From Octopus sinensis (lineage: Eukaryota): a DNA stretch of 63,868 nt. The notes under the pieces are model-generated. The model was given only the letters and a program-made list of their open reading frames with translations. It was not told the origin of the DNA and ran no database searches. Location: NCBI RefSeq assembly GCF_006345805.1, contig NW_021832256.1:1-63868 (forward strand). Direction: 5' to 3'. The translations under genes were made by a program, and so were the position numbers. This document shows, in pieces, positions 1,354-63,868 of this stretch. The stretch's first letter is position 1. Each line of letters starts with the position of its first letter.

Positions 1354-1580
1354 CAGTCATATATATATATGCACACCCTGATATGTATATCTTATACACA
1401 CAACACACACACAATACACACATATCAGAGAGAGAAGGGGAGACGGGGTGAAGAGTAAGAGGGAGAAGAGAAGGAAAGGGGGAAGGAGAGGAGAGGAGAG
1501 AGAGAAAGAAAGAGAGAGGTTTGCATATGCAAATATATAAAGGAATATATATATGTATATATATATATGTATATATATAT

Positions 1581-1620
<40 letters not shown>

Positions 1621-1690
1621 TATAGGAAGGTGGCTGTATGCATTGATTGCTAATATATATATATATATATATATGTGCATGTAATTATGT

Positions 1691-1734
<44 letters not shown>

Positions 1735-2181
1735 TATGTACACATACATATATGTACATATACATGCATACATAAATACATACGTACATACATACATATT
1801 TGCATACATACACACATGCATGCATACATACACACACACACACACACATATACCCACACACACACACACATATACCCACCCACACACACACATGCTTAGT
1901 TATATCATCTGAATCTGAAAGAATCGTCTGATCTTGAAAGCGACTCCGGTCGAGTGCCCGACTTCACTGGAGGCAACTGCGCCATTTTCATCTCCCTTCC
2001 ATAATGGCCATCCCGAGGAAAGAAGAGCGACTTGGCTTCTTTCTCATTTTACGTTTGTTGACTCGAGATTGTTGCATGAGGTAAAAATGAGGCATGGATA
2101 ATAGATAACTACGTGGCGTGTGTAGATGTGTGTGTGTGTGTACGTGTGTGTGTGTGTTTTGTGTGTTGTGTGTGTGTGTAC

Positions 2182-2212
<31 letters not shown>

Positions 2213-2401
2213 GGTGTGTGTGTGTGTGTGTGTACGTGTGTGTGTGTTGTGTGTGTGTGTAGATGTGTGTGTGTGTGACGTGTGTGTGTGTGCGTGTACG
2301 TGCGTGTGTGTGTGTGTTGTGTGTGTGTTTATAAAGTGAGACAGCGAGGCGTTCTTTTATTCTTTGACTGGTTTTAATCATTAGACCGGCCCAGATATAC
2401 A

Positions 2402-2454
<53 letters not shown>

Positions 2455-2469
2455 TATACATATAATATA

Positions 2470-2528
<59 letters not shown>

Positions 2529-2680
2529 ATACTGCATACATGCATGTTTTCATTTTATGAATCTCTGCCTTGACTTCTGTGTATATGTGTGTGTGTGTAT
2601 GTGTGTGTGTGTGTTTGTGGTGGTGCGTGTGTGTGCGTGTGTGACTTCATTCGTATGTCTGTACACGTGTGTACGTTACT
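1030..2680. repeat. Compound (CA)n/(TA)n/(GA)n/(TG)n microsatellite region with a short unique island
   Basis: Direct inspection; the ORF-track calls here are dinucleotide-repeat artefacts. Confidence 0.9.
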
Positions 2681-2904
2681 GTTTTGGGACTAAAGTTTTT
2701 TAATTCTTAGCATATATTCACAGTTCCATAAAGACAACCTATAATTAGCATAAAATATTATAATTAGCCGTGTCCTTTCTGGTTTTTGTGACGCCCGTGT
2801 GCTCAAGACTGTGACATAGTTTGTTACATAACTAAGTGCCTGATGCGGAACTAGAATTTGTGCCACTCCTGGACTGTCCTTGAACGTACTCTGACCGTTG
2901 ATGA

Positions 2905-3200
2905 AGGACGGATTCGGCATCAAGAGTTACACAAATACTAGAACTGGGCGCCACTGCATAGTGCCAAGGACTCCAAATTTGCCATCAAGATGTAGGACAA
3001 GATACTGTGATAGCCTGGGCTTCAGAGGCCCACACTCTTCAATATCCTCCCGAAGAACCTGAGAGACCTGCATTGAGTGGATGCAGATGTCTTTAAAATA
3101 AACTGGATCTCTTCCTGTCAGGTGTCCCAGATGAACCATTCACGGCAGCAGGTGCAGATGAGGGCAGCTGCATCGAATCTCTCATGCACCAAATGCAATT
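2905..3200 (+). mobile_element. CR1/L2-like LINE 3' fragment
   Basis: Broken reading DSLGFRGP-LFNILPKNLRDL...DVFK..LDLFLSGVPDEP, typical of CR1-group ORF2 C-termini. Confidence 0.6.
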
Positions 3201-3303
3201 GCTAAAAGGCATTCGTGAGTAAATCATGTAGCAACACCAATGGCGGTACCCCAGCAGGCCACAGCTCGAGCTGAAACTAGATAAAATAAAATAAATAAAA
3301 AGA

Positions 3304-4521: not shown

Positions 4522-7500
4522 TCATAGGATTATGCTCAAGGTGGCTTCGTCATTCATACGTGCCATTCTTGCTACATTCACCCATCTTTTTTTAAAACAT
4601 TCGCTAGACAAAACTTGCCTCTCTACTCTCACTTTCCTTTTCAAGTGGTACTTGAAGAAGTTGATGAGAGATTGACCAGAGAGGAAAGTGTTTGTCTCCA
4701 ATCCTTTCAGACGCGTCCACCAGATACATTCTTTCGCCATAGCCACAAGGATGATGAAAATAGCTCTTCCTTCCCGTTTGAAGGAAGGAGGCGTGACAAT
4801 ATTGACGATAGACTCAGCTGATAAACCGACTCGTCCCACACGTGACAGCAGTTGTTCGACATAAGCCCACAGGTCGGAAATTGTTGGACACTGAACGAGT
4901 GCGTGCAGAACGGTTTCGTCGCTCTGACCGCATCTCGGGCAGGTCGGCCCCGTGTTTCTCGAGCCGTGTCTGTAGAGCTTATCCCGAACGGGTAGCGCTT
5001 CTCGGTAGCACTGCCAGGCCAGGGATCTCTGGAAGTTGTCCATGGGCCCTGGCCCGAAAGTCGTCCTGAACAGGCGGGTCAGGTACTCCTCGTCGACGTC
5101 CAGGTTCGCCCCGAGCTCGTCGTCGTACCTCCCCTCCACTAAACCCCTATAGAATGCTTTGGTTGTGTTGAAGTCACTTAAGGTCGACCCAGGACGGCAG
5201 AGTTGCTTGAGAGCAACGCGACACTCGCGGTGCCATTCGCCCTTCCTCGGCCTCTTTTTGATCCACGACTGCAGTTCGGTCATGGAGACGAGCTGCGGGA
5301 AAGCGTGCCTCACAAACGGCGACCACACCTGTTCACCGTCGTCTACATAGAGCCAGAGATGTCGCAGTCTCAGCGCGTGTCTGCGCATCATCAACCACGG
5401 CATGCCCAGCCCTCCTTTTAACGGGTGTTGACAGCAAATGGATCGCCTGACCATCGGGACGCATCCTTTCCACAAGAAGCGAAAGAGAATGCGTTGTAGT
5501 TTGGTGATGGTAGGGTCGGGACAAGGTACGACGGTCAGGCGGTAGTAGATGACGGACGCGATGTACGTGTTCGCCACCTCCGCTCGACCTTTTAGGGACA
5601 GTTTCCTCTCGGCCATTGCCGGGCGAGAGTGACCACCCTACTCGTTATCTCGTTCCAGTTCTTCTCCACTTGGAGGTCCGGACCAAACCAGACCCCGAGC
5701 AACTCAACCGGGCCGTCGGTCCAGCGTCCCACGACGGAGGCGCTGGTGGACGGCATGGGCTTGCTTCTCCAGGTGCCTAGTCGCAAGCCCACTGACTTTT
5801 CCCGGTTGATTTTCGCTCCTGTCACCGCTTCGTAGTTTTTCAGTGTCTCGCCGACCAGCTCGATGTGCTCGTGGCTAGACACTATGACGGTGACGTCGTC
5901 CGCGTATGCAGACACGCTCGTCCCGCATCCCAATTCTCGCGGGATGCCCCTTAGAGTCGCCAGCTTCCGCAGTAGTGGCTCAAGAGTCAATACGTATAGA
6001 AGCGCCGAGAGGGGGCATCCCTGACGGACCGAACGTGCAATGTCGAAAGGTCTCGATAGATGTCCATTTACGCGAATTACCGAACGGATGCCTCTGTACA
6101 AGGCAGCTATCCAGCCGCGGAAGACGGGACCGAAACCAGCCGCTCTCAGGACTGCCTCCAAGTATCGATGGTCTACCCTATCAAGGCTTTCGATTGATCC
6201 AAGTTGATCAGGGCCCCACCCATGCCAGGTTCGTTAACTACCCTGTCTATGATGTAGCGCATCAGATGGAGGTTGTCATGGATGGTCCGGCCTGGCACGG
6301 CGCACGTTTGCGCCTTGTCGACCAGTTTCTCGATGACAAGCGCCAACCTCTTGGCTAGCACCTTGGCCAAAATTTTCAAGTCTGCATTAAGCAGAGTGAT
6401 GGGCCTAAAGTTATCTATTACATTTCCTTGTTTAGATCTTTCTTCAGCAGTGTTACGGCTCCTCGGCTCACAAAACCAGGAATGCTCCCGTTTTGCTGCC
6501 AGTTGCAGTACACCGCCGCCAGAGATCTCCAAACAGTCTGGCATACAATTGTAAGCTCGTAGGTAGACCATCCAAACCCGGTGATTTGTCCCTCGAGCAT
6601 TCTGCCATCGCTTCCCGCACTTCCGCCGCCGTGATGGCACCTTCGCAGCACCCTGCCTTTCTTGTCGAGAGTCGTGGTAGGCTATGTAGGTAGGCACTGA
6701 AGTCCACCCTACGTTCTTGCCCTCCACTCGTTCCGAACAGTCGGGCAAAATGCTGCTGAAAGGCCTCACACATTTTACTTGGCTCGAGCAATTCGCGCCC
6801 CTGTTCATCTACCAGTGACCGAATGGTGGCTTTGTTGCCCTGTTGCGCCTCTGCCACCCGGGCCTCTCTCGCGGCTCCAACACCTTCGTTCCTTAGAGCA
6901 CGCATCCTAGCTCTGACAGCACATCCTTCGTGTTTGGCGTTGAAGTGTTGGTCGAGGGCCAACCTCGCCGCCAAAACGTCGGATGCGATGCCGCTTCTAA
7001 TTGCCTCTTCTAGCTTCTTAACTAGCTCACCCTCTACTCTATTTCTATCTATGGCTAGTGCTTTGCTGTACCTAATCGCTTCTGCTTTTACTGCTCTCTT
7101 GAGGGCAAACCACCATTTGTTGTTGATGATGGCTCCCGTCAAAGCCCTCTTTACTAGTGTGCTAATCCGGTCTCTGAAAACCTGTCTCGATGGGAAAGAC
7201 GCGTTTAGTTTCCAGTATCCGGGACCCTGCCTAAGTGTCTTACCTAAGTCTAGCGTACATGTCACAAGTTTGTGATCCGTGTAGCTGACTATGTGGAATT
7301 GTGGACATCCTATGCTATCTCTATCTACTGTCCTACACAGTATCCTATCTAGATACGATCTCGACGACCCGATGCGGTTGCTCCATGTCCACGTTGGCGC
7401 ATTCGGGTGGTCTAGTCGGAACCTGTCAGACAGTTGAAAGCGTCTGAGCAGGTCTCTGAGGCATTTGCATCCCCGTCTATTCCTATCTCTACCCACGTAG

Positions 7501-7952
7501 TCTACATGCGTGTCCAAGGTAGCATTCCAATCCCCCACTAAGAGTAAAGGACGAGACGTTCCCAAGAATACTTCTAGACGTTGAAAGAAATCCGCCCGAC
7601 CTGTTAAGGGCGGTGCGTAAACTGATACGAGTCGAAAAGCGCACCCATTGCTGCCGTCGACATCCAGGACGACCAGTCTACCCTCCGGGTCTACGAATAT
7701 TGTCCTTACTTTGAGATCCAGACTCTTGTGAAAAAGTACCGCGGTGCCACTACCGCCCATTCTCGGCAGACAGGGGGAAAAATAAATGTTGAACTGTCCG
7801 CCAAACATGGTCTTTAGGGCCCGCGGATTGTGGAGTCTGGTCTCACTTATGGCTATGATTTCTAACTTATGTGACTTTATGTCATTTAAGAGGTACCCTT
7901 GTTTCCAAGGGGACCCCAAGCCACGCGCATTTACACAACCAATCTTGATCAT
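4522..7952 (-). pseudogene. Element A ORF2: APE endonuclease + reverse transcriptase + zf-RVT-like motif, several frameshifts
   Basis: MIKIGCVNARGL, LLLVGDWNA, SYLDRI, SYTDHK (APE); FRPITLLNADLKILAK, VRQGCPLS, AYADD (RT); CPRCGQSDETVLHALVQC. Confidence 0.92.
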
Positions 7953-11256: not shown

Positions 11257-14200
11257 TTACAGATTTATGCTTAAAATAGTGTCGTCTTTCATACTGACCA
11301 TTTTTGCCACTTTTACCCACTTTTTATTAAAACATTCGTTCGACAAAGCCTTCCTCTCTATTCTCATCCTCCTTGAAAAAGTTGACACTTGGTACTTGAA
11401 AAAGTTGACAAGAGACTTACCAGAGAGTAAGGTGTTTGTTTGCAGTCCTTTCAAACGCGTCCACCACACACATTCTTTCGCCATAGCCATCAGCGTAACG
11501 AAAACCGTGTTCCCTTCCCGTTTAAAGGAAGGTGGTGGAACAATATTCACGATAGACTCGGCCGATAGGAGGGCCCGACCTACACGTGACAACAGCTGTT
11601 CGACGAAGGACCACAGCTCTGAAATATCTGGACACTGCACGAGTGCGTGCAGAACGGTTTCGTCGCTCTGACCGCATCTCGGGCAGGTCGGTCCGGTGAT
11701 GGTTTTCGAACCGTGCCTGTAGCTCTTCTCTCGAACAGGTATGCGTCTCGCCTCGATAGCATTGCAAGCCAGGGATTTCTGGAAGTTATCCATAGGCCCC
11801 GGCCCGAACGTCGTCCTGAACAGGCGGGTTAGGAATTCCTCGTCGACGCCCAGGTTTGCCCCGAGTGTGTCGTCGGACCTCCCCTCCACTAGTCCTCTAT
11901 AGAACGCTTTAGTCGTTTGTAAGTTGCACAAGTTTGACCCCGGTCGGCAGAGCTGCTGTAGAGCTTGGCGACACTCTCGGTGCCAATCGCCCAGTTTCGG
12001 TCTCTTCTTGATCCACGTTTGCAGTTCGGTCAGTGAGACGAGCTGCGGGAAAGCGCGCCTCACAAACGGTGCCCACACCTGTTCACCGTCGTCGATGAAG
12101 TTCCAGAGATCGCAGTCTCAGCGCATGCCTGCGCATCATCAACCACGGCATGCCCAGTCCTCCATTCAACGGATGTTGACAGCAAATAGACTTCCTCACC
12201 ATCGGAACGCGGAAGAGTATGCGTTCCAGTTTGGTGATGGTGGCGTCGGGACAAGGCACGACGGTCAGGCGGTAATCGATGACGGATGCGATGTACGCGT
12301 TCGCCACCTCCGCCCGGCCTTTTAGAGACAGCTTTCTCTCGGCCCATGTTTGGCTGAGAGCGACCATTCTACTCGTGATCTCGTCCCAGTTCTTATCCAT
12401 TTGGAGGTCCGGACTGAACCAGACCCCGAGCAATTTAACCGATCCGTCCGTCCAGCGTCCCACTACTGAGCCACAGTCGGACGGCATGGGCTTGCTTCTC
12501 CAGGTGCCAAGTAGCAAACCCACTGACTTTTCCGGGTTAATCTTCGCTCCCGTCACCGTTTCGTATTTTCTTAGTGTCTCGCCTATCATCTGGATGTGTT
12601 TGTCGCTCGACTCTATGACGGTGACATCGTCCGCATATGCCGACACGCTCGTCCCGCAACCCAGTTCCCGTGGGATGCCCCTCAGTGTTGCCAGCTTCCG
12701 TAGTAGCGGCTCGAGAGTCAATACATACAGAAGCGCCGACAGGGGACACCCCTGACGGACCGAACGCGTGATGTCAAACGGTTTCGATAAGTGGCCATTC
12801 ACCCGAATCACCGATCGAATGCCGCTATACAAGGCAGCGATCCAACCGCAGAAGACGGGACCGAAGCCAGCCGCCCTGAGGACGGCCGCCAAGTACCGAT
12901 GGTCGACCCTATCGAAGGCTTTAGACTGATCCAAATTTATCAGCGCCCCACCCATGCCAGGATCCTTAACTACCCTGTCCACAATGTAGCACATCAGATG
13001 GAGGGTGTCATGTATGTTTCTGCCCGGCACAGCGCATGCTGCATGTCCTGTCGACCATTTACCAACCATGACAAGTGCCAACCTCTCGGCTATTACTTTG
13101 GCCAAAATTTTCAAATTTGCGTTGAGCAGAGTGATGGACCTGAAATCTATAAAATTCCCCTTGTTTGGGTCTTTCTTCAGCAACGTCACTGCACCTCGGC
13201 TCACGAAACCGGGGATTCTCCCGTTTTGTTGCCAGTTGCAGTAGACTGATGCCAAGAGGTCGCCAAACAAGCCTGGCATTTGACAATACAGCTCGTAGGG
13301 TAAACCATCCAATCCAGGCGACTTATCCCTCGCGCATCCCGCCATCGCATCCCGCACGTCAGCGGCTGTGATGGGACTTTCACAACACTCCGCTTCTCTT
13401 GCCGAGAGCCGCAACAAGTCGGTCAGGTAGGCACTGAAATCCATCCCGCGTTCCGACCCACCACTCGCACCAAACAGTCGAGCAAAGTGCTGTTGAAAGG
13501 CCTCACACATCCTTTCAGGTTCGAGTAAACTGCATCCCTGTTGATCTATTAGAGACCGAATGGTGGCTCTGTTGCCACGCTGCGCCTCCGCTACCCTGGC
13601 CTCTCGCGCAGCTTCGATCCCTTCGTTCCTTAAGGCACGCATTTTAGCTCTGACGACGCAACCTTCGTGCTTGGCGTTGGGTGTTGGTCGAGGGCCATCC
13701 TCGCAGCGCACGTTGGTTGCGCTGCCATTGGTATGCCTCTTCTAGTTTCTTAACTAGGTCTCTCTCTACTCTATTTCGATCTATCGCTAATTCCTTGCTA
13801 ACCTAATTGATTCCGATTTTATTGCCATTTTCAGGGCGGTACCACCAGCGGTTGTTAACGACGGCTCCCGTCAGCGCCTCTTGATTAACTCGCTAATCCG
13901 GTTCCTGTAAACCTGTCGCGCTAAGAGCGACGTGTTCAGTTTCCAGTAACCGGGACCCTGTCTATGTGTCTTATCTAAGTCGAGCGTACACGTCACAAAT
14001 TTGTGATCTGTGTAGCTGACTATTTTAAATTGTGGACATCCTACACTATCCTTATCCGCTGTCCTGCATAGAATTCTATCTAGATAAGATCTCGACGATC
14101 CGACGCGGTTTGTCCAAGTCCACGTTGGCACGTTCAGATGGTCGAGTCAGAACCTGTCAGACAAATGGAAACGTCTGAGTAGGTCTTTGAGGCACTTACA

Positions 14201-14683
14201 CCCCCCTCTATTCCTATCTATTCCCACATAATCTAGATGCGTGTCCAAGGTAGCGTTACAATCCCCTACTAACAGTAAAGGTCTAGACGTACCCAGGAAA
14301 ACCTCTAGACGTCTGAAGAAATCCGCCCGACCCGTTAAGGACGGTGCATAAACTGCCATCAGACGGAATGCACACCCATTTCTGCCATCCACGTCCAAGA
14401 CAACTAGCCTACCCGCCGGGTCTAGGAATATTGTTCTTACTTTTACATTTAGACTCTTTCGAAAAAGCACCGCGGTAGATCCACCACCCATGTTCGGCAG
14501 ACAAGGAGAAAAATAAATGTCAAATTGATCGCCAAACATGGACGCGAGGGCCCACGGCTTGCTGAGTCTAGTTTCACTGATAGCTACTATATCCACGTTC
14601 AGTGACTTGATGTTGTTTAGAAGGTAACCTTGCTTCCAAGCCGATGCCAAGCCACGCGCATTCACACAACCTAATTTAAGCAT
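11257..14683 (-). pseudogene. Element B ORF2 (APE-RT-zf), frameshifted with an internal deletion near 13.7 kb
   Basis: MLKLGCVNARGL, SYTDHK, LDQSKAFDRVDH, VRQGCPLS, AYADD, CPRCGQSDETVLHALVQC. Confidence 0.92.
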
Positions 14684-14771: not shown

Positions 14772-16518
14772 TCATTTTTTTTCTTCTTCTTTTGTAGTGT
14801 CTTTGATGAGGTGTTTGTATAGTTTTTTGGAGATGTATCGTTGAAACCCGCCTACCGCATTTGGAAATATTGTTTTCAGTGTATGGTGTTGTGTTTGTGT
14901 TATGTGTACAATTCTTATGTGTTTCGGTGGTGTGGTGCGCGGATGATTGTTTGTCTTAAAGTCATCTTCACAGATGTCCGTGTTGGATGCAATGTAATCC
15001 ATAAATTTTTTATTGTCTGTGTCTATTGCAGTTAGTTGTGTGTGTGGTTTTGCGGGTTCATTGATTTTTTGATTGTCTAGGGGGATGCTGTCCGGAGTTA
15101 AATATCTCCCTGCTTTACTTCCTTGTTTGGTAGGCTTTTTTAATCTTTTCCTTTTACCCCCTGTGGCTATTTGCCATTCCGTCGAACTTTCGTCGTCCGA
15201 CGAATCAGAAGGGGGTAAAGGTAAATCATTTGCGTTAATATGTATGCTTGTAGAAATTGTTGATGTTTTGTGCGGTGTTTGTGTTGTTGTGGTGTTAGGG
15301 GTAGAATTTGTCTTCTCGTCACTGTTTTCTGTCTTTTTAATTGTCGTCCTCGGTGTTGGTGTTGATCTATTTTTTGTTGGTTCAGCATGTTGAATTGGTT
15401 GCGACGTCAACAGTGATTGTGTTGGTACCGTTTCTTTTCTTGGTGATGTTGTTGGGGTTTGTTTGCTGGTTTGTTGTTTTTCTTGGCATTGTTCCATAAT
15501 TGAGTGTGTTGGTGTTGGTGTTGGTTTTGGCAACAAGGGTTTTTTATTTGTTTTCTGATTTGTTCTTTCTTGTTTTTTTCTGTGCCAGAGCGCACTTGGC
15601 AATTAAATGTTCTGGGCTGCCACAGTTGTAGCATCTAGGCTTTTTGCCTTCTGCTACAACATATAGGCTTTGCCCATTTTCTAAGTGGATCCTATCAGGT
15701 AGGTTCTCGATAGAGGACCCCTCAATCATGATGTTCACTACTATTGTTTTTCCACTCCAATTGTCGTTTTCGTATACGGCAATCTCTAAAATATTTATAG
15801 TTTTCAAATGGTAACAGATTGCCCCTGTTATCCATTTGTTAGAAATCTCGGGGGGTACATTTTTAATAGTAATTCTACTGACTCTCTGGCCTTTGTAATA
15901 AGGTACCATGATGATTTCATCATTCTGCAAAGACTCCGTAGAGTGAGCTTTTGCCACTTCCTGTTTAGGGAAGCGGACCACCACTGTATTAAACTGGGGA
16001 CCCCAGTTTTTTTTTTTTTCATTATGTTTTTTAAACACTTTTCTATGTCCGTTTTTGTAATCTGTTCATTTCGTTTTTTGTTTTTTCTTATAATTTTATA
16101 TATAATTGTCTTATTTTCTATTTGTACCTTTATGTGTTGAGGTGTATGCAGCACTAAATCTTGCCCTTGAGTTGTAAAGAGTGCTCTCGTTTCTATTAAC
16201 TCTTCATTCGTAAATTTTACTATTTCTTTTTTTGTGACGCAGAGTGTCAGCGAAATTTACTGGTGTTGTTGATTCTTTTATATTAACGTCTTCACTATGA
16301 GATAGTAAGATATTTATTTCATTTTTATTGTTGTTCTTCTTGTTGTTGTTGTTTTTGTTAATAGTATTCGCGTGAGTTTCATTTTTATCATTTATGTTGG
16401 TGGTGGTGGAGGTGGTGGTGGTAGCAGTAGTAGTCTCGTTGTTGTTGTTAGTGGTGGTGGTGGTGGTGGTGGTGGTGACAGGGCTGTTACCGCAAGTGGT
16501 TGCAGCGTTCACTACCAC
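14772..16518 (-). pseudogene. Element B ORF1 (CCHC knuckle), frameshifted
   Basis: KPRCYNCGSPEHLIAKC; SDSSDDESSTEWQIAT resembles element A SDSSEISSEDETSEEWQIAT. Confidence 0.8.
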
Positions 16519-17567: not shown

Positions 17568-18353
17568 TATTTCTTTACTACCCACAAGGGGCTAAACACA
17601 GAGAGGACAAACAAGGACAGACACACGGACTAAGTCGATTATATCGACCCCAGTGCGTAACTGGTACTTATTTAATCGACCCCGAAAGGATGAAAGGTGA
17701 AGTCGACCTCGGCGGAATTTGAACTCAGAACGTAACAGCAGACGAAATACCTATTTCTTACTACTCACAAGGGCTAACACAGAGAGGACAAACAAGGACA
17801 GACAAACGGATTAAGTCAATTACATCGACCCCAGTGCGTAACTGGTACTTATTTAATCGACCCCGAAAGGATGAAAGGCAAAGTTGACCTCGGCGGAATT
17901 TGAACTCAGAACGTAAAAACAGAAATACCTATTTCTTTACTACCCACAAGGGGTTAAACACAGAGAGGACAAACAAGGACAGACAAACGGATTAAGTCAA
18001 TTACATCGACCCCAGTGCGAAACTGGTACTTATTTAAACGACCCCGAAAGGATGAAAGGCAAAGTTGACCTCGGCGGAATTTGAACTCAGAACGTAAAAA
18101 CAGAAATACCTATTTCTTTACTACCCACAAGGGGCTAAACACAGAGAGGACAAACAAGGACAGACAAACGGATTAAGTCAATTACATTGATCCCAGTGCG
18201 TAACTGGTACTTAATTTATCGACCCCGAAAGGATGAAAGGCAAATTCGACCTGGGCGGAATTTGAACTCAGAACGTAGCGGCAGAGGAAATACTGGTAAG
18301 CATTTCGCCCGGCCTGCTAACGTTTCTGCCAGTTTGCCACCTAAATACCACAA
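17568..18353 (-). mobile_element. SINE family M (tRNA head + central domain + Tx1-like tail): one headed copy plus three tandem 3' units
   Basis: Unit boundaries at 17568, 17752, 17930 and 18111; single head at ~18290-18353; core GCCTTTCATCCTTTCGGGGTCGAT resembles the Meta/Sauria-type domain as I recall it (unverified). Confidence 0.85.
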
Positions 18354-23770: not shown

Positions 23771-24583
23771 TGCGGATTCCATGCACAGCGAGGCTCACCA
23801 ATGGAGAAGTTCTTAAGCAGATCAGGCCGAAAATGTCGCTAGAAGCTGGGATCACCAAGCATAGATTGGCTATATTTCGGTCATATTATGCGGAGAGAAT
23901 CCCTGGAGAAGGACATCATGCTCGGAATGGTCAGTGGCAAGAGAGGAAGAGGCCGACCAATGGAGAGGTTCTTAAGCAGATCAGGCCGAAAATGTCGCTA
24001 GAAGCTGGGATCACCAAGCATAGATTGGCATATTTCGGTCATATTATGTGGAGAGAATCCCTGGAAAAGGACATCATGCTCGGAATGGTCAGTGGCAAGA
24101 GAGGAAGAGGCCGACCAATGGAGAGGTTCTTAAGCAGATCAGGCCGAAAATGTCGCTAGAAGCTGGGATCACCAAGCAAAAAAGATTGGCATTATTTCGG
24201 TCATATTATGCGGAGAGAATCCCTGGATAAGGACATCATGCTCGGAATGGTCAGTGGCAAGAGAGGAAGAGGCCGACCAATGGAGAGGTCTTAAGCAGAT
24301 CAGGCCGAAAATGTCGCTAGAAGCTGGGATCACCAAGCGTAGTTAGATTGGCATATTTCGGTCATATTATGTGGAGAGAATCCCTGGAGAAGGACATCAT
24401 GCTCGGAATGGTCAGTGGCAAGGTAGTGGCCAGAGGGAGAGGCCGACAAAGAACCCACTGGCTTGACACCATCAGGAGTGATACCGGAATGGACATGGCC
24501 AATCTGAAGGAAGCGGCCCAGGATAGAACTGATTGGAGGACACTGATCCAACGAGTAACCGAGAGTCGACTTCGACTGAGCGG

Positions 24584-26629: not shown

Positions 26630-27290
26630 CTTCGTGGCACTCCGTCGGTTACGACGACGAGCGCCCCAGCCGATCCAATCAACAGAACAGCCTGCTACAC
26701 GTGAAATTAACGTGCAAGTGGCTGAGCACTCCACAGACACGTGTAACATAGTTCCCAGGAAGATTCAGCGTGACCAAGGCTGGCCCCTTTGAAAGAAAGG
26801 TACAACAGAGACGGGAAGAAAGAGTGAGAGAAAGTTGTGGTGATAGAGTATAGAAGGGTTCGCCCCACCCCGTCAGAGCCTCGTGGCACTTTTAGGTGTT
26901 TTTGTTCGGTAAACACTCACGACGCCCTGTCTGGGAATCGAAACCGTGATCCTACGATAGCCGATCCAATCAACAGAACAGCCTGCTACACGTGAAATTA
27001 ACGTGCAAGTGGCTGAGCACTCCACAGACACGTGTAACATAGTTCCCAGGGAGATTCAGCGTGACCAAGGCTGGCCCCTTTGAAGGAAAGGTACAACAGA
27101 AACGGGAAGAAAGAGTGAGAGAAAGTTGTGGTGACAGAGTATAGAAGGGTTCGCCCCACCCCGTCAGAGCCTCGTGGCACTTTTAGGTGTTTTTGTTCTG
27201 TAAACACTCACGACGCCCTGTCTGGGAATCGAAACCGTGATCCTACGATCGCAAGTCCGCTGCCCTAACCACTGGGCCATTGTGTCTTCA
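26630..27290 (-). mobile_element. Tandem pair of chimeric SINEs (family D-like middle + family B tail)
   Basis: ~295-bp direct duplication; single tRNA head at ~27215-27290; middle AAGAAAGAGTGAGAGAAAGTTGTGG shared with family D. Confidence 0.7.
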
Positions 27291-27299
27291 CACACACAC

Positions 27300-27680
27300 A
27301 CACATCATCATCATCATCATCATCATCGTTTAGCGTCCGTTTTCCATGCTAGCATGGGTTGGACGGTTCTACTGGGGTCTGTGAAGCCAGAAGGCTTCAT
27401 CAGGCCCAGTCAAATCTGGCAGTGTTTCTACGGCTGGATGCCCTTCCTAACGCCAACCCACTCCGTGATGAGTGTAGTGGATGCTTTTACGTGCCACCCG
27501 CACAGGTGCCAGACAGAGCTGGCAAACGGCCACAAACGGATGGTGCTTTTACGTGTCACCGGCACGGGGCCAGGCGAGGCTGGCAACGGACACGAACGGA
27601 TGGTGCTTTTACGTGCCACCAACACGGGGGCCAGACAGAGCTGGCAAACGTCCACGAAACGGATGGTGCTTTTACGTGTC
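27300..27680 (-). mobile_element. 5'-truncated 3' UTR of the RTE-like LINE (family C) with multiple hairpin modules
   Basis: (CAT)n tail; homology to 39705-40150. Confidence 0.75.
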
Positions 27681-27785
27681 TACATCGTTTGTAGAAATGC
27701 ATTAATCTGGAGGAGCACACTGTAAGATGCACAGCAGTTAATATTGTAGTGGGGTCAGGGTTTAGGGTTAGGGGGCACAAACGTT

Positions 27786-28975
27786 AGCACACCGGACGAA
27801 ATGCTTTGTGGTATTTCGTCCGCCGCTGCGTTCTGAGTTCAAATTCCGCTGAGGTCGACTTTACCTTTCATCCTTTCAGGGTCGATAAATTAAGTACCTA
27901 TTTCTTTGTTACCCACAAGGGGCTAAACACAGAGGGCACAAACAGGGACAGACATAGGTATTAAGTCGATTACATCGACCCCAGTGCGTAACTGGTACTT
28001 ATTTAATCGACCCCGAAAGGATGAAAGGTAAAGTCGACCCCGGCGGAACTTGAACTCAGAACGTAGCGGCGGACGAAATACCTATTTCTCTACTACCCAC
28101 AAGGGGCTAAACACTGAGAGGACAAACAAGGACAGACAAACAGATTAAGTTGATTATATCGACCCCAGTGCGTAACTGGTACTTATTTAATCGACCCCGA
28201 AAGGATGAAAGGTAAAGTCGACCCCGGCGGAACTTGAACTCAGAACGTAGCGGCGGACGAAATACCTATTTCTCTACTACCCACAAGGGGCTAAACACTG
28301 AGAGGACAAACAAGGACAGACAAACAGATTAAGTTGATTATATCGACCCCAGTGCGTAACTGGTACTTATTTAATCGACCCCGAAAGGATGAAAGGTAAA
28401 GTCGACCCCGGCGGAACTTGAACTCAGAACGTAGCGGCGGACGAAATACCTATTCTCTACTACCACAAGGGGCTAAACACTGAGAGGACAAACAAGGACA
28501 GACAAACAGATTAAGTTGATTATATCGATCCCAGTGCGTAACTGGTACTTATTTAATCGACCCCGAAAGATGAAAGGTAAAGTCGACCCCGGCGGAATTT
28601 GAACTCAGAACGTAGCGGCGGACGAAATACCTATTTCTCTACTACCCACAAGGGGCTAAACACTGAGAGGACAAACAAGGACAGACAAACAGATTAAGTT
28701 GATTATATCGACCCCAGTGCGTAACTGGTACTTATTTAATCGACCCCGAAAGGATGAAAGGCAAAGTGAACCTCGGCGGAATTTGAACTCAGAACATAGC
28801 GGCAGACGAAATACCGCTGAGCATTTCGCCCGGCGTGCTAACGTTTCTGCCAGCTCGCCGCCTTAGATAAATTAAGTACCAGTTATGCACTGGGGTCGAT
28901 GTAATCCACCTAATCCGTTTGTCTGTACTTGTTTGTCCCCTCTATGTTTAGCCCCTTGTGGGCAATAAAGAAATA
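27786..28975 (+). mobile_element. SINE family M copy interrupted by an antisense five-unit family M concatemer
   Basis: Host halves 27786-27898 and 28866-28975; GATAAATTAAGTACC duplicated at 27884-27898 and 28866-28880. Confidence 0.85.
27899..28865 (-). mobile_element. SINE family M concatemer (one head + five bodies) with 15-bp TSD
   Basis: Unit boundaries at 27899, 28083, 28267, 28451 and 28632; single head ending at 28865. Confidence 0.88.
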
Positions 28976-29024
28976 AATATTGTAGTGGGGTAGACCGGTA
29001 TGTGTGTGTGTGTGTGTGGTGTGG

Positions 29025-29382: not shown

Positions 29383-30355
29383 GGGGTCTTTTCGGTTTGA
29401 ATGGCAGTTTTTAACATAATTTCTAGTTAACTAAACACTTTTAAACTTCGTATACTGGTAGAATATATTTATAAAACATATTTTTCTCTTGGTTTTATTG
29501 AGAAGATTCTATAGTTTGTAAGATATTTGTTGTGTTTTTCTCTTCAATTTCTGCAATTTCAACCAATCACTAACGTCTATTGAGGTGAAAAACATTCTGT
29601 GCCGTATGAATATGTCCCTCGTTTCAGAAACAGATTGGGTTTATTTACATTTGCGAAGAAAAAAAGATACCCTTCCCCCACCCCTAACCCTAAAACAGAT
29701 TGAAATGCAATAGATCGATACTAGGGTCATAATTATGGGTGACAATTTCATACGGCACCGCTACGGAAAATGTGATTTTTTTCTAGCGGTGTCAAATGAA
29801 AATGTCACCCATAATTATAACCCTAGTATCGATCTATTGCATTTCAATCTATTTTAGATTTAGGGTTAGGGTTAGGGGGGGAGGGTATTAGTGGGGGAAG
29901 GGTATCTTTTTTTTCTTCGCAAATGTAAATAAACCCAATCTGTTTCTTAAACGAGGGACATATTCATACAGCACGGAATGTTTTCACCCCAAATGGAGGT
30001 CAGCGATTGGTTAAAATTGCCGAAATGCTCAAAATTTCAGACGATATATCTTACAAACTATAGGATTTTCTCAATAAAGCCAAGAGAAAAAATGATGTTT
30101 TATAAACACATTCTACCAGTATACGAAGTTTAAAAGTGTTTGGTTAACTAGAAATTGTGTTGACAAGTGCCGTTCAAAAGGAAAAGATCCAAAAAGATAC
30201 CCTTCCCCCCACCCTTAATCCTAACCCACCCTAACTCTAACCCTAACCCTAAAACAGATTGAAATGCAATAGATCCATACTAGGGTCATAATTATGGGTG
30301 ACAATTTCATACGACACCGCTAGAAAAAACTGCCGTTCAAACCGAAAAGATCCCC
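29383..30355. mobile_element. Foldback/MITE-like element with long internal inverted arms, (TAACCC)-like tracts and a long flanking duplication
   Basis: Termini GGGG-TCTTTTCGGTTTGAATGGCAG and CTGCCGTTCAAACCGAAAAGATCCCC; AGTGCCTAATATATT at 29368-29382 and 30356-30370. Confidence 0.8.
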
Positions 30356-30546: not shown

Positions 30547-31522
30547 CTGTGGCTGTGTGGTAAGTAGCTTGCTTACCAACCACATGGTTCCGGGTTCAGT
30601 CCCACTGTGTGTCACCTTGGGCAAGTGTCTTCTACTATAGCCTACCTTGTGAGTGGATTTGGTAGACGGAAACTGAAAAGAAGCCTATCGTATATATGTA
30701 TATACATATATGTGTAGGAGTGGCTGTGTGGTAAGTAGCTTGCTTACCAACCACATGGTTCCGGGTTCAGTCCCACTGCGTGGCACCTTGGGCAAGTGTC
30801 TTCTGCTATAGCCCCGGGCCGACCAATGCCTTGTCAGTAGATTTAGTAGACGGAAACTGAAAAGAAGCCTGTCGTATATATGTATATACATATATGTGTA
30901 GGAGTGGCTGTGTGGTAAGTAGCTTGCTTACCAACCACATGGTTCCGGGTTCAGTCCCACTGCGTGGAACCTTGGGCAAGTGTCTTCTGCTATAGCCTAC
31001 CTTGTGAGTGGATTTGGTAGACGGAAACTGAAAAGAAGCCTATCGTATATATATATACGACAAAAGGAAAAGATCCTTATTTACATTTCTGAAGAAAAAA
31101 AGGATACCCTACCCCCACCCCTAACCCTAACCCTAAAATAGATTGGCTGTGTGGTAAGTAGCTTGCTAATCAACCACATGGTTCCGGGTTCAGTCCCACT
31201 GTGTGGCACCTTGGGCAAGTGTCTTCTGCTATAGCCTCGGGCCGACCAATGCCTTGTGAGTGGATTTGGTAAATGGAAACTGAAAGAAGCCCGTCGTATA
31301 TATGTATATATATATATGTGTGTGTGTATGTGTTTGTCCCCCTAGCATTGCTTGACAACCGATGCTGGTGTGTTTACGTCCCCGTTACTTAGCGGTTCGG
31401 CAAAAGAGACCGATAGAATAAGTACTGGGCTTACAAAAGAATAAGTCCCGGGGTCGATTTGCTCGATTAAAGGCGGTGCTCCAGCATGGCCGCAGTCAAA
31501 TGACTGAAACAAGTAAAAGAGT
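30547..31522 (+). mobile_element. SINE family A array: three 5' halves, a foldback fragment, then a complete copy
   Basis: Heads at ~30547, 30717, 30900 and 31145. Confidence 0.8.
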
Positions 31523-39490: not shown

Positions 39491-39704
39491 AATTGTTTCA
39501 AATTTTGGTTCAAGGCCAACAATTTTGAGGGGAGGGGCAAGGGAATTGCATCAGTCCCATTGTTCAGCCTATTTCCTATTTTATCAGCAATGAAAAAGGA
39601 GTACCGGCAGAGTTGACCTCAGTGGAATTTGAACTCAGAACAGAGAACCAGAAGAAATTCCACAAGGCGTTTTTTGTCTGATCTGCTAATGATTGTGCAA
39701 ACTC

Positions 39705-42700
39705 ATCATCATGATTGTTTAACGTCCGCTTTCCATGCTAGCATGGGTTGGACGGTTCAACTGGGGTCTGGGAAGCCTGAAGGCTGCACCAGACCAGTCA
39801 GATCTGGCAGTGTTTCTACAGCTGGATGCCCTTCCTAACGCCAACCACTCCGTGAGTGTGGTGGGTGCTTTTTATGTGCCACCGACACAGGTGCCAGACG
39901 AGGCTGGCAACGGCCACGCTCGGATGGTGTTTTTTATGTGCCACCGACACAGGGCCCAAACGAGGCTGGCAAACGGCCACGCTCGGATGGTGCTTTTAAC
40001 GTGCCACCGGCACGGAGGCCAGGCGAGGCTGGCACGGCCACGATCGGATGGTGTTTGTTACATGCCCACAGCACGGAGGCCAGTCGATGTGGTACTGGCT
40101 ACGGCCACGTTCAGATGGTTTTCTTATGTGCCACCGGCACTGGTATCACAAAAATACAAATTCCATTGATGTTCATCGATTTTGATTTGGTTTGATTTTC
40201 ACTTGCCTCAACAGGTCTTCACAAGTGTCCCAAGAAGGAAGGTATACACAGGTCTTCTCGCGCGCAGCATACTTCCAAAGGTCTCAGTCTCTGGTCATTT
40301 CCTCGGTGAGACCTAAAGCGCGAAGGTTGTTCTTCACCACCTCGTCCCAGGTTTTCCTGGGTCTACCTCTTCCACAGGTTCCCTCAACCGCTAGGGTGTG
40401 GCACTTTTTCACACAACTATCTTCATCCATTCTTACTACGTGTCCATACCAGCGTAGACGCCTCTCTTGCACACCACATCTGATGCTTCTTAGGTCCAAC
40501 TTTTCTCTCAAGGCACTTACACTCTGTCGGGTATGAACACTGACATTACACATCCAACGGAGCATACTGGCTTCATTTCTTGCGAGCTTACGCATATCCT
40601 CAGCAGTCATGGCCCATGTTTCACAGCCATGTAGCATGGCTGTTCGCACACATGCGTCATACAGTCTGCCTTTTATTCTGAGTGAAAGGCCTTTTGTCAC
40701 CAGCAGAGGTAAGAGCTCTCTGAACTTTGCCCAGGCTATTCTTACTCTAGCAGTTACACTTTCGGCACACCCACCCCTGCTACTGACTTGGTCACCTAGG
40801 TAACGGAAACTATCAACTATTTCAAGTTTTTCTCCCTGTAATGTGGCGGAAGATGGTCTCTGCACATCTTCAGTCTTTATTGAACCAGAGCATCTGCCAC
40901 ATACAGAAACTATCTTCCTAGTTAGCCTTCCTTTGACATTGCTGCACCTCTTATGTGTCCATAGCTTACACTTGGTGCATCTTATAGAGTTCCTACCTAT
41001 GCCTTTTCTACAGATCGAGCAGGGCCATCTACCTGAAGGTGTTTGAGATTTGTCTACCTTCCTACTTATTACGACTTTGGTTTTAGCTAGATTGACTCTA
41101 AGGCCCTTCGATTCTAATCCTTGCTTCCACGCCTGAAACTTCACCTCAAGTTCTGATAGTGATTCAGCAATTAGAGCAAGGTCGTCAGCATAGAGGAGCT
41201 CCCAGGGGCATCCTGTCTTGAATTCCTCCGTTATTGCCTGGAGGACTATGATAAATAGGAGGGGGCTGAGGACTGAGCCTTGGTGGACCCCAACCTCCAC
41301 CCAGAATTCTTCACTGTACTCATTGCCAACCCTCACCTTACTAACAGCGTCCCTGTACATGGTATGCACAGCTCTCACTAACCATTCATCTACCCCTAGT
41401 TTCCTCATTGACCACCAGATGAGGGATTGGGGGACCCTGTCAAAGGCTTTCTCCAAGTCAACGAAAGCCAGGTACAGAGTTTTATCTTTGGCTAGGTATT
41501 TCTCCTGCAGCTTTCTCACCAGAAATATGGCATCAGTGGTGCTTTTCCCTGGCACGAAACCAAACTGCATCTCGTCTAGGTTGACTCTCTCTCTAATCAA
41601 TTGGGCTATGACCCTTTCCGTAACCTTCATTACCTGATCCAACAGCTTAATACCTCTGTAATTACTTGTATCTAGGGCGTCACCTTTACCTTGTAGCAGT
41701 TGACTATTATGCTGCTACACCAGTCATTGGTATGACTCCTTCGTGTATCACCTGGTTAATAATATACGGGTGACTAGGCTATAACCAACACTGCCAGATT
41801 ATTTTGAGCATCTCCGCAGTAATTCCTGACGGGCCTGGGGCTTTCCCTGTCTTCATGCTTCCAATTGCCTTAACTACCGTGGAACTGTCAACTCGGATAG
41901 CTGGTCCCTCTATTGGGTCGACATTCGGCAGACTCTCTTTATCCCATTCATTCTCTTTGTTGAGCAACCTTTCATAGTGGCATCTCCAAACCTCTCTCTT
42001 TGCATCCTCATTTTTTCTTATCTGCTTCCCCTCTAGCTAAATACACCTGTCTCCTAGCTTCTCTTTTCGCAGTCTGATACAATTCCCTACTACCGCCTTT
42101 CCTCCAGTCCTTCCAAGCCTCTCTCTTGTCTCTAATAGCCCTGTCTACAACATTGTTCCACCACCACGTTACCCTGGGACGAGATGGGACTTTGCTCCAT
42201 CCACAGATCTGGTCAGTAGCTCTCAGCAGATTGTCCCGTAGAAACCTCCAGTTGGCTTCCACATTATGTGATGCTATATCCCCTTCTATTTTGTCGAAAG
42301 CTTCGAGTAGAACTTCTCTAAATCTCCGTCCATTTACAGGATCTTTAAGTTTCCAGACTCTTCTCCTCCGAGCTGGTCTTCTTCTGGGCAGCCATTTGGC
42401 CCTGATCCTGAAGACGCTAACTACTAATCTATGTTGAGGAGTACATTCCTCGCCTGGGAAGGTTTTGGCATTTATAAGCAGCCCTCTTTCCCTCTTTCTG
42501 GCAAGGATGTAGTCGATCTGGCTAGTGTGTCTGCCAGAACGGTAAGTGACTAGGTGAGAGGTGGGTTTCCTGAAGTTGGTATTGCAGACCATAAGGTCAT
42601 TTGCATCGCAGAACTCCAGCAGCCTGGTTCCCTTCTCATTGCGAGAACCAAAACCGTAGCCCCTGTGTATGCCATAGAAGCCCCCGACATGCCGTCCAAC

Positions 42701-42945
42701 ATGTCCATTGAAGTCACCTGCCACAAAGAGAAGGTCACTGTCATTTGTCAACGAGGTAGTCTGTAATAGGGTGTTGTAGAATTGGTCTTTCTGTCCTTCC
42801 GGTAGCCCTGGTTGAGGGGCATATGCCGAGATGATGGTAACTGACCTATGGTGAAGCACTAATCTAATCTTAAGTACTCTGTCACTTACTCTGACTACCT
42901 CGATTACCTTATCTACTCATTTCTCCACAAGAAGTATACCCACGC
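39705..42945 (-). mobile_element. 5'-truncated RTE-like LINE (APE + RT with Cys-rich insert) with long modular 3' UTR
   Basis: ORF 42008-42859 (IISAYAP, VAGDFNGHVG, SQIDYIL); ORF 40284-41642 (DLEKAFD, HQGSVLSP, YADD, RLRWYGHV); UTR ends in (GAT)n. Confidence 0.9.
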
Positions 42946-49690: not shown

Positions 49691-49925
49691 ATATACAAAA
49701 AAAAGAAAACAATAAATGGAACAAGAGCGTAACAGGCGACAACAAAACATCCGGACAGTTAGGTGATACATAAAAGGACAGGAAAAAACAAGGATGGGTC
49801 ATTCGGAGCTTTCAATCTTCAGTCGACTACCAAATCGTTTTTGCAGTTTACTCGAGACTGCTATAATCTGGCCAGCCCCAAGAAAATCTAAGCCAAGAGC
49901 ACTACATTGCTATATATATATATAT

Positions 49926-50154
49926 ATTTCTTTACTACCCACAAGGGGCTAAACACAGAGGGGGACAAACAAGGACAGACAAACAGATTAAGTTGATTAC
50001 ATCAACCCCAGTGCGTAACTGGTACTTAATTTATCGACCCCGAAAGGATGAAAGGCAAAGTCGACCTCGGCGGAATTTGAACCCAGAACGTAACGGCAGA
50101 CGAAATATGGCTACGCATTTCGCCCGGCGTGCTAACGTTTCAGCCAGCTCGCCT

Positions 50155-52200: not shown

Positions 52201-52618
52201 AAGGCAGCGAGCTGGCAGAAACATTAGCACGCCAGGCGAAATGCTTGGCGGTATTTCGTCTGCCGCTACGTTCTGAGCTCAAATTCCGCCAAGGTCGACT
52301 TTGCCTTTCATCCTTTCAGGGCCGATAAATTAAGTACCAGTTATGCACTGGGGTCGATGTAATCGACTTAATCCATTTGTCTGTCCTTGTTTGTCCTCTC
52401 TGTGTTTAGCCCCTTGTGGGTAATAAAGAAATTGGTATTTCGTCTGCCGCTACGCTCTGAGTTCAAATTCCGCCGAGGTCGACTTTGCCTTTCATCCTTT
52501 CAGGGTCGATAAATTAAGTACCAGTTACGCACTGGGGTTGATGTAATCAACTTAATCCATGTGTCTGTCCGTGTTTGTCCCCTCTATGTTTAGCCCCCTG
52601 TGGGCAATAAAGAAATAA
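52201..52618 (+). mobile_element. SINE family M dimer (head + two bodies)
   Basis: GTATTTCGTC at 52251 and again at 52435. Confidence 0.85.
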
Positions 52619-54899: not shown

Positions 54900-55098
54900 T
54901 CAACTTTTTGCACAAGGCCAATAATTTTGGAGGAGGGGGATGAGTCAAATACAGTGCTCAACTGGTACTTATTTTATTGACCCCGAAAGGATGAAAGGCA
55001 AAGTTGACCTTGGTGGAATTTGAACTTGGAATGTAAAGACAAAATGCCGCTAAGCATTTTGCCTGGGGTGCTAACAATTCTGCCAGCTTGCTGCCTTA
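54900..55098 (-). mobile_element. Family M head and core with an alternative (non-Tx1) tail
   Basis: Same head and core, but tail CCCCTCCTCCAAAATTATTGGCCTTGTGC; related tails near 469-550 and 39495-39550. Confidence 0.6.
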
Positions 55099-63610: not shown

Positions 63611-63868
63611 GGTGATGGTGTTGAGCTGGCAGAGTCATTAGCATGCTGGGAAAAATACTTAGCGACCTTTTGTCTCTTTATGTTCTGAGTTCAAATTCCG
63701 CCATTGTCAACTTTGTTTCTCCTCCTTTTAGGATTGATAAAATAAAATAAGAACTAGTTAATTGCTGGCTTTGTGTCAGAGTTGGAATCCAATAACCCAT
63801 GGCCTCTACCTGGGATGTAGCCAGTCCACTTATGCATACCTTTCCTTCTTGGGACACAAACTCTACAT

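What the first reader, a model, noticed from the sequence alone, without database searches (positions are those of the whole stretch)
27884..28880. Five-unit SINE concatemer bracketed by one 15-bp TSD inside another copy of the same SINE
Seen: GATAAATTAAGTACC at 27884-27898 and 28866-28880 flanks the antisense pentamer, and removing it restores an intact + strand SINE M. The 3'-terminal unit differs at several positions from the four near-identical others (e.g. TTCTTTGTTACC versus TTCTCTACTACC). Inference: at least a multimer went in as one TPRT event, possibly using more than one RNA template. The SINE core may be a preferred target.
Basis: partly seen in the sequence, partly recalled or inferred. 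Interest (0 to 1): 0.7.

Follow-up and report, generated by a model that had tools for sequence, protein, structure and literature searches.

The report
Nested octopod SINE grown into array
A short mobile element (SINE) in an octopus-type genome jumped backwards into an older copy of itself; it now carries five tandem copies of its body, which grew from a two-unit founder by unequal recombination, a known route from SINEs to small satellite arrays.

Summary
An exact 15-bp duplication (27884-98, 28866-80) brackets a 967-bp antisense insert. Removing the insert and one repeat restores a colinear older sense copy (M), which has its own 16-bp TSD.

The insert is not five SINEs. It is one full element (50-nt head part plus a 184-nt rest) followed by four head-less 184-bp units. 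Each unit starts at the apical loop of a conserved hairpin in the head and ends at the SINE's last base.

The same junction (GAAATA|GGTATTTCG) occurs in two other loci of this window (four units, two units), so it is a family trait.

Within the pentamer all divergence sits in the outer half-units: A·B | C·B ×3 | C·D. That is the signature of a two-unit founder expanded stepwise by unequal exchange, not of five templates copied in one event. The founder units differ by 11% while the TSDs are perfect, so at least a dimer was probably inserted.

The six bases after the SINE end resemble GGTATT at all five loci. This points to microhomology in dimer formation or in target choice.

Single-TSD SINE arrays are already published for bivalves, and SINE-derived satellites for squamates. 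The finding is real but modest. Genome-wide data are needed to settle the mechanism.

The parts
27740..27755 (+). 5' target-site duplication of the older host SINE copy M (AATATTGTAGTGGGGT)
   Evidence: Exact 16-bp repeat of 28976-28991.
27756..27773 (+). 18 extra bases (CAGGGTTTAGGGTTAGGG, telomere-like) between M's TSD and its 5'-truncated head
   Evidence: absent from the other copies' heads.
27774..27898 (+). Left part of host SINE M (family positions ~15-139); its last 15 bp are TSD copy 1 of the insert
   Evidence: 87% to the family query; colinear join with 28881-28975.
27884..27898 (.). TSD copy 1 of the antisense insert (GATAAATTAAGTACC; GGTACTTAATTTATC in the insert's orientation)
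27899..28082 (-). Unit 5 (3'-terminal, 184 bp), type C·D: 5' ~109 bp identical to units 3 and 4; 13 differences, all in the last ~76 bp
28083..28266 (-). Unit 4 (184 bp), type C·B, identical to unit 3
28267..28450 (-). Unit 3 (184 bp), type C·B
28451..28631 (-). Unit 2 (181 bp), type C·B with ancestral A33, one further substitution and three 1-nt homopolymer deletions
28632..28815 (-). Unit 1 body (184 bp), type A·B: 7 differences from the inner units, all in the first ~54 bp; 3' part identical to the inner units
28816..28865 (-). First 50 nt of the SINE head, present only once; ends in the apical loop (47-50) of the conserved hairpin 35-46/51-62
28866..28880 (.). TSD copy 2 of the antisense insert
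28881..28975 (+). Right part of host SINE M, ending in GAAATA
28976..28991 (+). 3' TSD of M
17568..18342 (-). Independent four-unit array (T4) of the same family with the same junction GAAATA|GGTATTTC; tentative imperfect TSD GGTATTT(AG)/GGTCTTTT(AG)
52201..52617 (+). Independent two-unit copy (D2) with the same junction (GAAATT|GGTATTTCG)
49925..50153 (-). Uninterrupted monomer of the family inside a (TA)n tract; used as reference for the empty site

Best explanation
An antisense copy of an octopod tRNA-type SINE inserted by LINE-driven target-primed reverse transcription into the core of an older sense copy (M), duplicating 15 bp. The TSD, the orientation and the restored empty site are shown. 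What inserted most likely already had two units: a full element plus one head-less 184-bp unit. The junction runs from the SINE's last base to position 51, which is the first base of the 3' arm of the head's anticodon-like hairpin. That it was a dimer at insertion is inferred. Such a dimer could be a copy of a multimeric source gene. It could also have formed during reverse transcription, by a microhomology-guided switch (GGUAUU) from position 51 of one SINE RNA to the 3' end of another. The two-unit founder [A·B][C·D] then grew stepwise to five units at the DNA level. Unequal crossing-over or replication slippage created the recombinant C·B units. The recombinant pattern is shown; whether growth happened at this locus or already in the source gene is not resolved.
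For: One exact 15-bp TSD and a colinear empty site. The host copy has its own exact 16-bp TSD, so it is a nested insertion. Mosaic: all 13 differences of unit 5 from the inner units lie in columns 109-177 [(76/185)^13 is about 1e-5]. All 7 differences of unit 1 lie in columns 11-53 [(54/185)^7 is about 2e-4]. Units 3 and 4 are identical. Stepwise growth: unit 2 keeps ancestral A33 while units 3-5 share G33. Dimer at insertion: the founder units differ at 20/184 sites, which matches or exceeds their distance to copies at other loci (unit 1 is 13 from T4_u4). P(no change in the 62 bp of the two nested TSD pairs) is 0.03 if that divergence had arisen in place. Family trait: the same junction occurs in a 4-unit and a 2-unit locus. 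T4's first unit has TAAATT where its other units have TTAAAT, and both are linked double variants seen at other loci. Structure: the unit boundary lies at the loop of a conserved hairpin, with compensatory changes at pairs 39-58 and 46-51. Microhomology: the six bases after GAAATA match GGTATT at 20/30 positions over five loci (7.9 expected; 0/200,000 draws). There is no run of four or more T in the 967-nt sense strand, so Pol III read-through of a multimer is possible. Published precedent for single-TSD SINE arrays: PMC11481361.
Against: Only five loci of the family are available, and no further copies could be retrieved. The dimer-at-insertion step therefore rests on a weak clock (P 0.03-0.2) and on shared polymorphisms, several of which are CpG sites prone to parallel change. 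ARAGORN and Rfam do not recognise the head as a tRNA. No partner LINE with the same tail was found in the window. The identical units 3 and 4 and the homopolymer deletions in unit 2 could be assembly or polishing effects, so the copy number is unverified. T4's last unit does not share its 5' half with T4's inner units as cleanly as in the pentamer.
Confidence: 0.55

Rival explanations
1. A monomer inserted. A first tandem duplication then arose in place, by replication slippage or microhomology-mediated repair between GGTA at the start of the 3' TSD and GGTA at head position 51. The two units later diverged, and the array expanded by unequal exchange.
For: The periodicity runs 4 bp into the TSD (TRF array starts at 27895; junction GAAATA|GGTA both internally and at the flank). 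T4's tentative TSD also begins GGTATTT. A neighbouring SINE family shows a clearly DNA-level internal 291-bp duplication (26668-27249, 98% identity, junction not at the element end). Squamate SINE satellites are attributed to unequal recombination (PMC10702118).
Against: The founder units differ by 11% while both nested TSD pairs are perfect (P about 0.03). T4's units carry different subfamily variants. D2 has the same junction but no GGTA in its 3' flank. Three loci would need the same 4-7 bp microhomology event independently.
Confidence: 0.2
2. There were two separate insertions. A resident antisense monomer was hit by a second, same-orientation copy at its own head site GGTATT (position 50/51). 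The new cDNA joined in register through homology with the resident copy, giving a seamless heterodimer that unequal exchange later expanded.
For: The 3' flanks of all five loci resemble GGTATT. The pentamer itself sits in a GGTACTT site inside another copy. This would explain founder units of different lineage. Argonauta relatives lie in head-to-tail chains.
Against: It needs precise in-register 5' joining at three of five loci. No intermediate of the form [1-65][full copy][51-234] is seen. The targets of M, the monomer and D2 differ in sequence, so the nuclease is not strictly site-specific.
Confidence: 0.12
3. All five units were produced in one reverse-transcription event. This could be repeated template jumps between several SINE RNAs, rolling-circle copying of a circular 184-nt RNA, or repeated homologous switches on a dimer RNA.
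For: A single TSD; near-identical inner units; junctions free of filler bases; the unit boundary at an RNA hairpin loop.
Against: The inner units are recombinants of the two outer ones rather than independent copies. Unit 2 differs from units 3-5 at A33/G33 and by 6 further changes, while units 3 and 4 have none. Seven changes falling in one of about four unit-equivalents has P about 2e-4 if all units were the same age.
Confidence: 0.06
4. The copy number, or part of the array, is an assembly artefact (mis-expanded or mis-polished tandem repeat).
For: Units 3 and 4 are 100% identical. The three single-base deletions in unit 2, and similar ones in T4 unit 3, all fall in homopolymer runs.
Against: The outer half-units, the junctions and both TSDs are unique sequence that anchors the array. 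Two other loci show the same architecture.
Confidence: 0.07

Closest known systems
TSD1-(SINE)n-TSD1 tandem-like SINE arrays in the blood clam Scapharca broughtonii (Mob DNA 2024, PMC11481361)
   Same: One TSD pair around the whole array; the first unit has a complete tRNA-related head; inner units lack the head's 5' part; the last unit has a complete tail; mollusc genome.
   Different: In the clam the first and inner units are also truncated in the 3' tail. Here every unit runs to the SINE's very last base. The same junction also recurs at independent loci, and the 3' flank shows microhomology with the unit start.
SINE-derived satellites (sSats) of squamate reptiles (Mob DNA 2023, PMC10702118)
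   Same: Tandem repeats built from a portion of a SINE, arising repeatedly; initial duplication attributed to unequal recombination or same-locus insertion, followed by homogenisation.
   Different: The squamate arrays are longer and satellite-like, with a suggested subtelomeric location. Here the arrays have 2-5 units, sit inside recognisable insertions with TSDs, and still carry the full head at the 5' end.
Template-switch chimeric retrocopies (e.g. U6-L1 chimeras) and end-to-end template jumping of non-LTR reverse transcriptases
   Same: Architecture of a full-length 5' partner plus a 5'-truncated 3' partner inside one TSD pair.
   Different: Known chimeras join different RNAs at variable points. 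Here both partners are the same SINE, and the switch point is the same base in all three loci.
Heritable dimeric/multimeric SINE families (Alu, Bov-A2; dimers/trimers of tRNA units cited in PMC4758252)
   Same: A fixed junction shared by dispersed copies, consistent with multimeric source genes.
   Different: Copy number varies (1, 2, 4, 5) between loci, and the units of one locus are recombinants of each other. This behaves like a minisatellite rather than a fixed dimer.

Membership tests
LINE-mobilised (non-LTR) SINE | Short, non-coding, dispersed in many copies | tested here: met
   About 234-nt element at 5 loci in 64 kb, plus sister families. A homologous body/tail is present in Argonauta hians.
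LINE-mobilised (non-LTR) SINE | Variable-length target-site duplications flanking individual copies | tested here: met
   15 bp (insert) and 16 bp (M), both exact; (TA)n for the monomer; T4 imperfect; D2 not found.
LINE-mobilised (non-LTR) SINE | tRNA-derived head with internal Pol III A and B boxes | tested here: inconclusive
   ARAGORN finds no tRNA. Rfam gives no tRNA hit even at E<=10. Box-like motifs (TTAGCACGCCGGG, GAGTTCAAATTCC) were seen by eye, and a conserved anticodon-like hairpin is present.
LINE-mobilised (non-LTR) SINE | 3' tail shared with a partner LINE | tested here: not met
   The SINE query hit only SINE copies in the window. The stretch downstream of the RTE-like ORF turned out to be a sister SINE. 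The partner may lie outside the window.
TSD1-(SINE)n-TSD1 arrays (PMC11481361) | One TSD pair brackets the whole array; first unit has a complete head; later units have the same head truncation | tested here: met
TSD1-(SINE)n-TSD1 arrays (PMC11481361) | First and inner units truncated in the 3' tail; only the last has a complete tail | tested here: not met
   Every unit ends ...GAAATA, as does the terminal unit and the monomers.
SINE-derived satellite (PMC10702118) | Tandem repeat whose monomer is a portion of a SINE, present at several loci | tested here: met
   184-bp monomer (positions 51-234) at three loci.
SINE-derived satellite (PMC10702118) | Amplification to long homogenised arrays, with a chromosomal (subtelomeric) bias | not testable with these tools
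   Only a 64-kb window is available. The arrays here have 2-5 units.
Template-switch chimeric retrocopy | Two RNA templates joined within one TSD pair; 3' partner 5'-truncated, 5' partner full-length | tested here: inconclusive
   The architecture fits, and the founder units look like different lineages. An inherited junction or DNA-level duplication is not excluded.

The most novel reading that the evidence does not exclude
The multimers are made during retrotransposition itself. The reverse transcriptase pauses at the apex of the head's anticodon-like hairpin. The nascent cDNA end (the complement of GGUAUU at positions 51-56) then transfers to the matching GGUAUU-like 3' end of a second SINE RNA. 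This resembles retroviral strand transfer through a short terminal repeat. A variant of the same idea is end-to-end jumping on SINE RNAs cleaved in the anticodon-like loop. Either way a single TPRT event would seed a tandem array, which would be a retrotransposition-coupled route from SINE to satellite.
Probability: 0.18. Interest if true: 0.6.

Novelty: new variant of a known kind. Interest (0 to 1): 0.35.

Why it matters
SINE-to-satellite transitions are documented, but how the first duplication arises is mostly guessed. This locus has a dated frame (two nested perfect TSD pairs) and a readable internal history (A·B | C·B×3 | C·D). It also belongs to a family in which the same junction recurs, running from the element's last base to a hairpin-loop position, with flank microhomology. 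With the whole genome in hand, this family could separate reverse-transcription-coupled from DNA-level seeding of tandem arrays. For annotation, such arrays will be miscounted as several SINE insertions, and nested inverted copies (89-125 nt arms, 87-92% complementary) are potential hairpin or dsRNA sources. As a single locus it is a modest, largely explained finding.

Tried and rejected
(1) I scanned metagenome, prokaryote-genome and viral contig collections for more copies, using a 25-mer and an 18-mer of the SINE. Only chance 18-20-mers came back.

(2) Exact look-ups of four LINE ORFs from the window found nothing on record, so the source species is not indexed. A homology search placed the window in octopods, but the nearest sequence (Argonauta, L018) carries only a distant relative of the SINE.

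(3) I tested whether the stretch downstream of the RTE-like ORF (39595-39661) is the partner LINE's 3' end beginning at SINE position 51. It is rejected: this is the head of a sister SINE family.

(4) I tested whether the partial copy at 54952-55098 is another copy interrupted at the core. It is rejected: this is a sister family with a different 3' module.

(5) Rfam and ARAGORN did not classify the head.

(6) No searchable paper quotes the SINE's sequence.

(7) Rolling-circle or one-shot synthesis of all five units is disfavoured by the A33/G33 pattern and by the uneven spread of private changes.

(8) I asked whether every tandem TE array here shares one mechanism. It does not. Family 2 (26668-27249) is an internal duplication with a junction away from the element end, and family 3 (30560-31060) is a whole-unit array.

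Full report
**1. The observation**

The 15-mer GATAAATTAAGTACC is present exactly at 27884-27898 and 28866-28880. It is also part of the SINE's own core. It recurs in other copies, and a 2-mismatch variant sits in every array unit. The motif count alone therefore proves nothing.

What proves a target-site duplication is the context:
- Between the two copies lie 967 bp of the same SINE family in antisense orientation.
- Joining 27774-27898 to 28881-28975 gives a sequence that aligns without a gap across the join to an uninterrupted copy at 49925-50153 (88.6% identity).
- The interrupted host copy (M) has its own exact 16-bp TSD, AATATTGTAGTGGGGT, at 27740 and 28976.

The order of events is therefore M first, then the antisense insert.

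TRF reports a 184-bp period, 5.0 copies and 96% matches at 27895-28815.

**2. Anatomy of the insert**

In its own orientation the insert is a 50-nt head part (28816-28865) followed by five units of 184, 181, 184, 184 and 184 bp. Only the first unit is a complete SINE of about 234 nt. The other four begin at family position 51 (GGTATTTCG) and run to the SINE's last base (...GAAATA). No filler bases occur at any junction.

Position 51 is the first base of the 3' arm of a 12-bp hairpin (35-46/51-62, loop 47-50) in the MFE fold. A consensus fold of seven heads from this and sister families keeps the hairpin, with compensatory changes at two pairs. The hairpin lies between A-box-like and B-box-like motifs, where a tRNA's anticodon arm would be. 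ARAGORN and Rfam do not call the head a tRNA.

**3. The multimer is a family trait**

A BLAST of the first unit against the window finds these copies:
- a four-unit array at 17568-18342(-), here called T4;
- a two-unit copy at 52201-52617(+), here called D2;
- a monomer at 49925-50153(-);
- the host copy M.

T4 and D2 have the same junction, GAAAT(A/T)|GGTATTTC. Three of five loci are multimers.

Other SINE families nearby also form tandem structures, but of different kinds:
- an internal 291-bp duplication whose junction is not at the element end (26668-27249, 98% identity);
- a whole-unit array (30560-31060).

**4. Internal history of the pentamer**

All 13 family-1 units were aligned. The differences are segmental, not scattered.
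- Unit 5 is identical to units 3 and 4 over its first ~109 columns. It then differs at 13 sites, all in columns 109-177.
- Unit 1 differs at 7 sites, all in columns 11-53, and is identical to units 3 and 4 thereafter.
- Units 3 and 4 are identical to each other.

The chance of such clustering is about 1e-5 for unit 5 and 2e-4 for unit 1.

The array therefore reads A·B | C·B | C·B | C·B | C·D, which is the same as A(BC)x4 D. This is the expected product of unequal exchange within a two-unit founder [A·B][C·D]. It is not what five independently copied templates would give.

Unit 2 keeps the ancestral A at column 33, while units 3-5 share G. Unit 2 also carries one more substitution and three homopolymer deletions. 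This points to at least three successive steps, with the caveat that the deletions may be polishing errors.

T4 shows a similar but older pattern: unit 1's 3' half matches the inner units' 3' half (2 differences).

**5. Was the founder dimer inserted as a dimer?**

The two founder units differ at 20/184 sites. That is no closer than they are to copies at other loci. For example, unit 1 is 13 differences from T4 unit 4. At seven of the 20 sites both states also occur at other loci, although several of these are CpG sites.

If an 11% divergence had accumulated in place, the 62 bp of the two nested TSD pairs should have changed. P(no change) is about 0.03, or 0.2 using the insert's own TSD alone.

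In T4 the first unit has TAAATT where the other three have TTAAAT. This is a linked double difference, and both forms are found at other loci.

Together these observations favour founder units of different ancestry. That means either a dimer at the time of insertion or a second insertion, rather than in-place duplication of a monomer. The evidence is suggestive and not decisive, because only five loci are available.

**6. Microhomology**

In the insert's orientation its TSD begins GGTAC. T4's tentative TSD begins GGTATTT (5' copy) and GGTCTTT (3' copy). The internal junctions begin GGTATTT.

Over all five loci the six bases after GAAATA match GGTATT at 20/30 positions, against 7.9 expected (0 of 200,000 random draws). 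The three loci without GGTA still give 10/18 (P = 0.007).

The homologous Argonauta tail ends ...GAGAAATCTATT, so TATT may belong to the RNA's 3' end.

Three mechanisms predict the junction GAAATA|GGTATTT:
- a cDNA switch from position 51 to the 3' end of another SINE RNA;
- priming at a unit junction of a multimeric RNA;
- DNA-level slippage between the flank and the head.

A preference for GGTAYT targets also explains why the insert hit M's core, which reads GGTACTT on that strand. However, only one of the 13 family-1 core copies in the window is interrupted.

The 967-nt sense strand has no run of four or more T, so Pol III read-through of a multimer is possible.

**7. Context and comparison**

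The window comes from an octopod. A LINE RT ORF has its best named hit in Argonauta hians (64%), unnamed JGI hits at 74-76%, and 44% to a cuttlefish protein. No copy of this SINE exists in the searchable DNA collections, and no paper quotes its sequence.

Single-TSD SINE arrays with a complete first head and head-truncated later units are described for the clam S. broughtonii (PMC11481361). There the first and inner units are also tail-truncated, which is not the case here.

SINE-derived satellites in squamates are attributed to unequal recombination or same-locus insertion (PMC10702118).

**8. Verdict**

The interpretation needs revision. There was one nested insertion, probably of a two-unit element whose junction is a family trait. 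Stepwise unequal exchange then took it to five units.

How the first dimer forms remains open. The candidates are an inherited multimeric source, an RT template switch, in-place slippage, or nested insertion. Settling this needs genome-wide data.

The finding is a new variant of a known kind and of modest interest.

Noticed in passing
window 27756-27773: The host copy M is 5'-truncated at about position 15 and has 18 extra bases, CAGGGTTTAGGGTTAGGG (telomere-like), between its TSD and the truncated head. These could be untemplated or template-switched 5' filler.
   Followed up: partly
window ~29830-30290 (also 29682, 31119): A foldback/MITE-like element whose inverted ends contain (TTAGGG)3 and (CCCTAA)n, nested in longer inverted repeats (CACCCATAATTATAACCCTAG...). 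Further short telomere-repeat runs lie nearby.
   Followed up: no
window 26668-27249 (-): A second tRNA-headed SINE family carries an internal 291-bp tandem duplication (98% identity). Its junction lies inside the head and body, not at the element's end, so it is clearly a DNA-level duplication.
   Followed up: partly
window 30560-31060 (+): A third SINE family forms a head-to-tail array of whole units including the TA-rich tail. Its period is also 184 bp, and the first and third units are alike while the middle one differs.
   Followed up: partly
window 17751-18110 (-): The two inner units of the four-unit array T4 share a 3-nt deletion and a TTTTT run (GGTATTTCTGTTTTTACG) that would act as a Pol III terminator. 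T4 unit 3 has homopolymer deletions like those in pentamer unit 2.
   Followed up: partly
window 54952-55098 (-), 39595-39700 (-), 63623-63745 (+): Sister SINE families share the head (and in one case the core up to GTACCAGTT) with family 1 but continue with a different 3' module (...CCCCTCAAAATTGTTGGCCTTG...). This is modular 'jigsaw' SINE evolution.
   Followed up: partly
window 27482-27678 and 39864-40140: Tandem repeats of 60-63 bp inside another repeat family. The unit contains GAGCTGGCAAACG, which resembles the first ~20 nt of the SINE (GAGCTGGCAGAAACG).
   Followed up: no
window 23790-24422: A 158-bp x 4 tandem array (95% matches). By eye its consensus looks like the C-terminal coding region of an RTE-type LINE.
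   Followed up: no
window 27774-28981: The nested inverted SINE copies give inverted-repeat arms of 89-125 nt at 86-94% complementarity, the nearest pair only 95 nt apart. They could form hairpins or dsRNA and might destabilise replication.
   Followed up: no
window 4522-7952 (-), 11257-14683 (-), 40284-42859 (-): Two degenerate copies of one LINE (endonuclease + RT + zf-RVT-type C-terminus) are each followed by an (ATCT)n-type microsatellite tail. There is also an RTE-like LINE. None shares the SINE's tail.
   Followed up: partly
L018 (Argonauta hians) 1460-3260 (-) and 14827-15323 (+): Related SINEs (body/tail 73-76% identical to positions 93-233) lie in head-to-tail chains. These include a 250-bp-period dimer of full units (77% matches) and a junction of one SINE's truncated tail to the next SINE's slightly truncated head.
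   Followed up: partly
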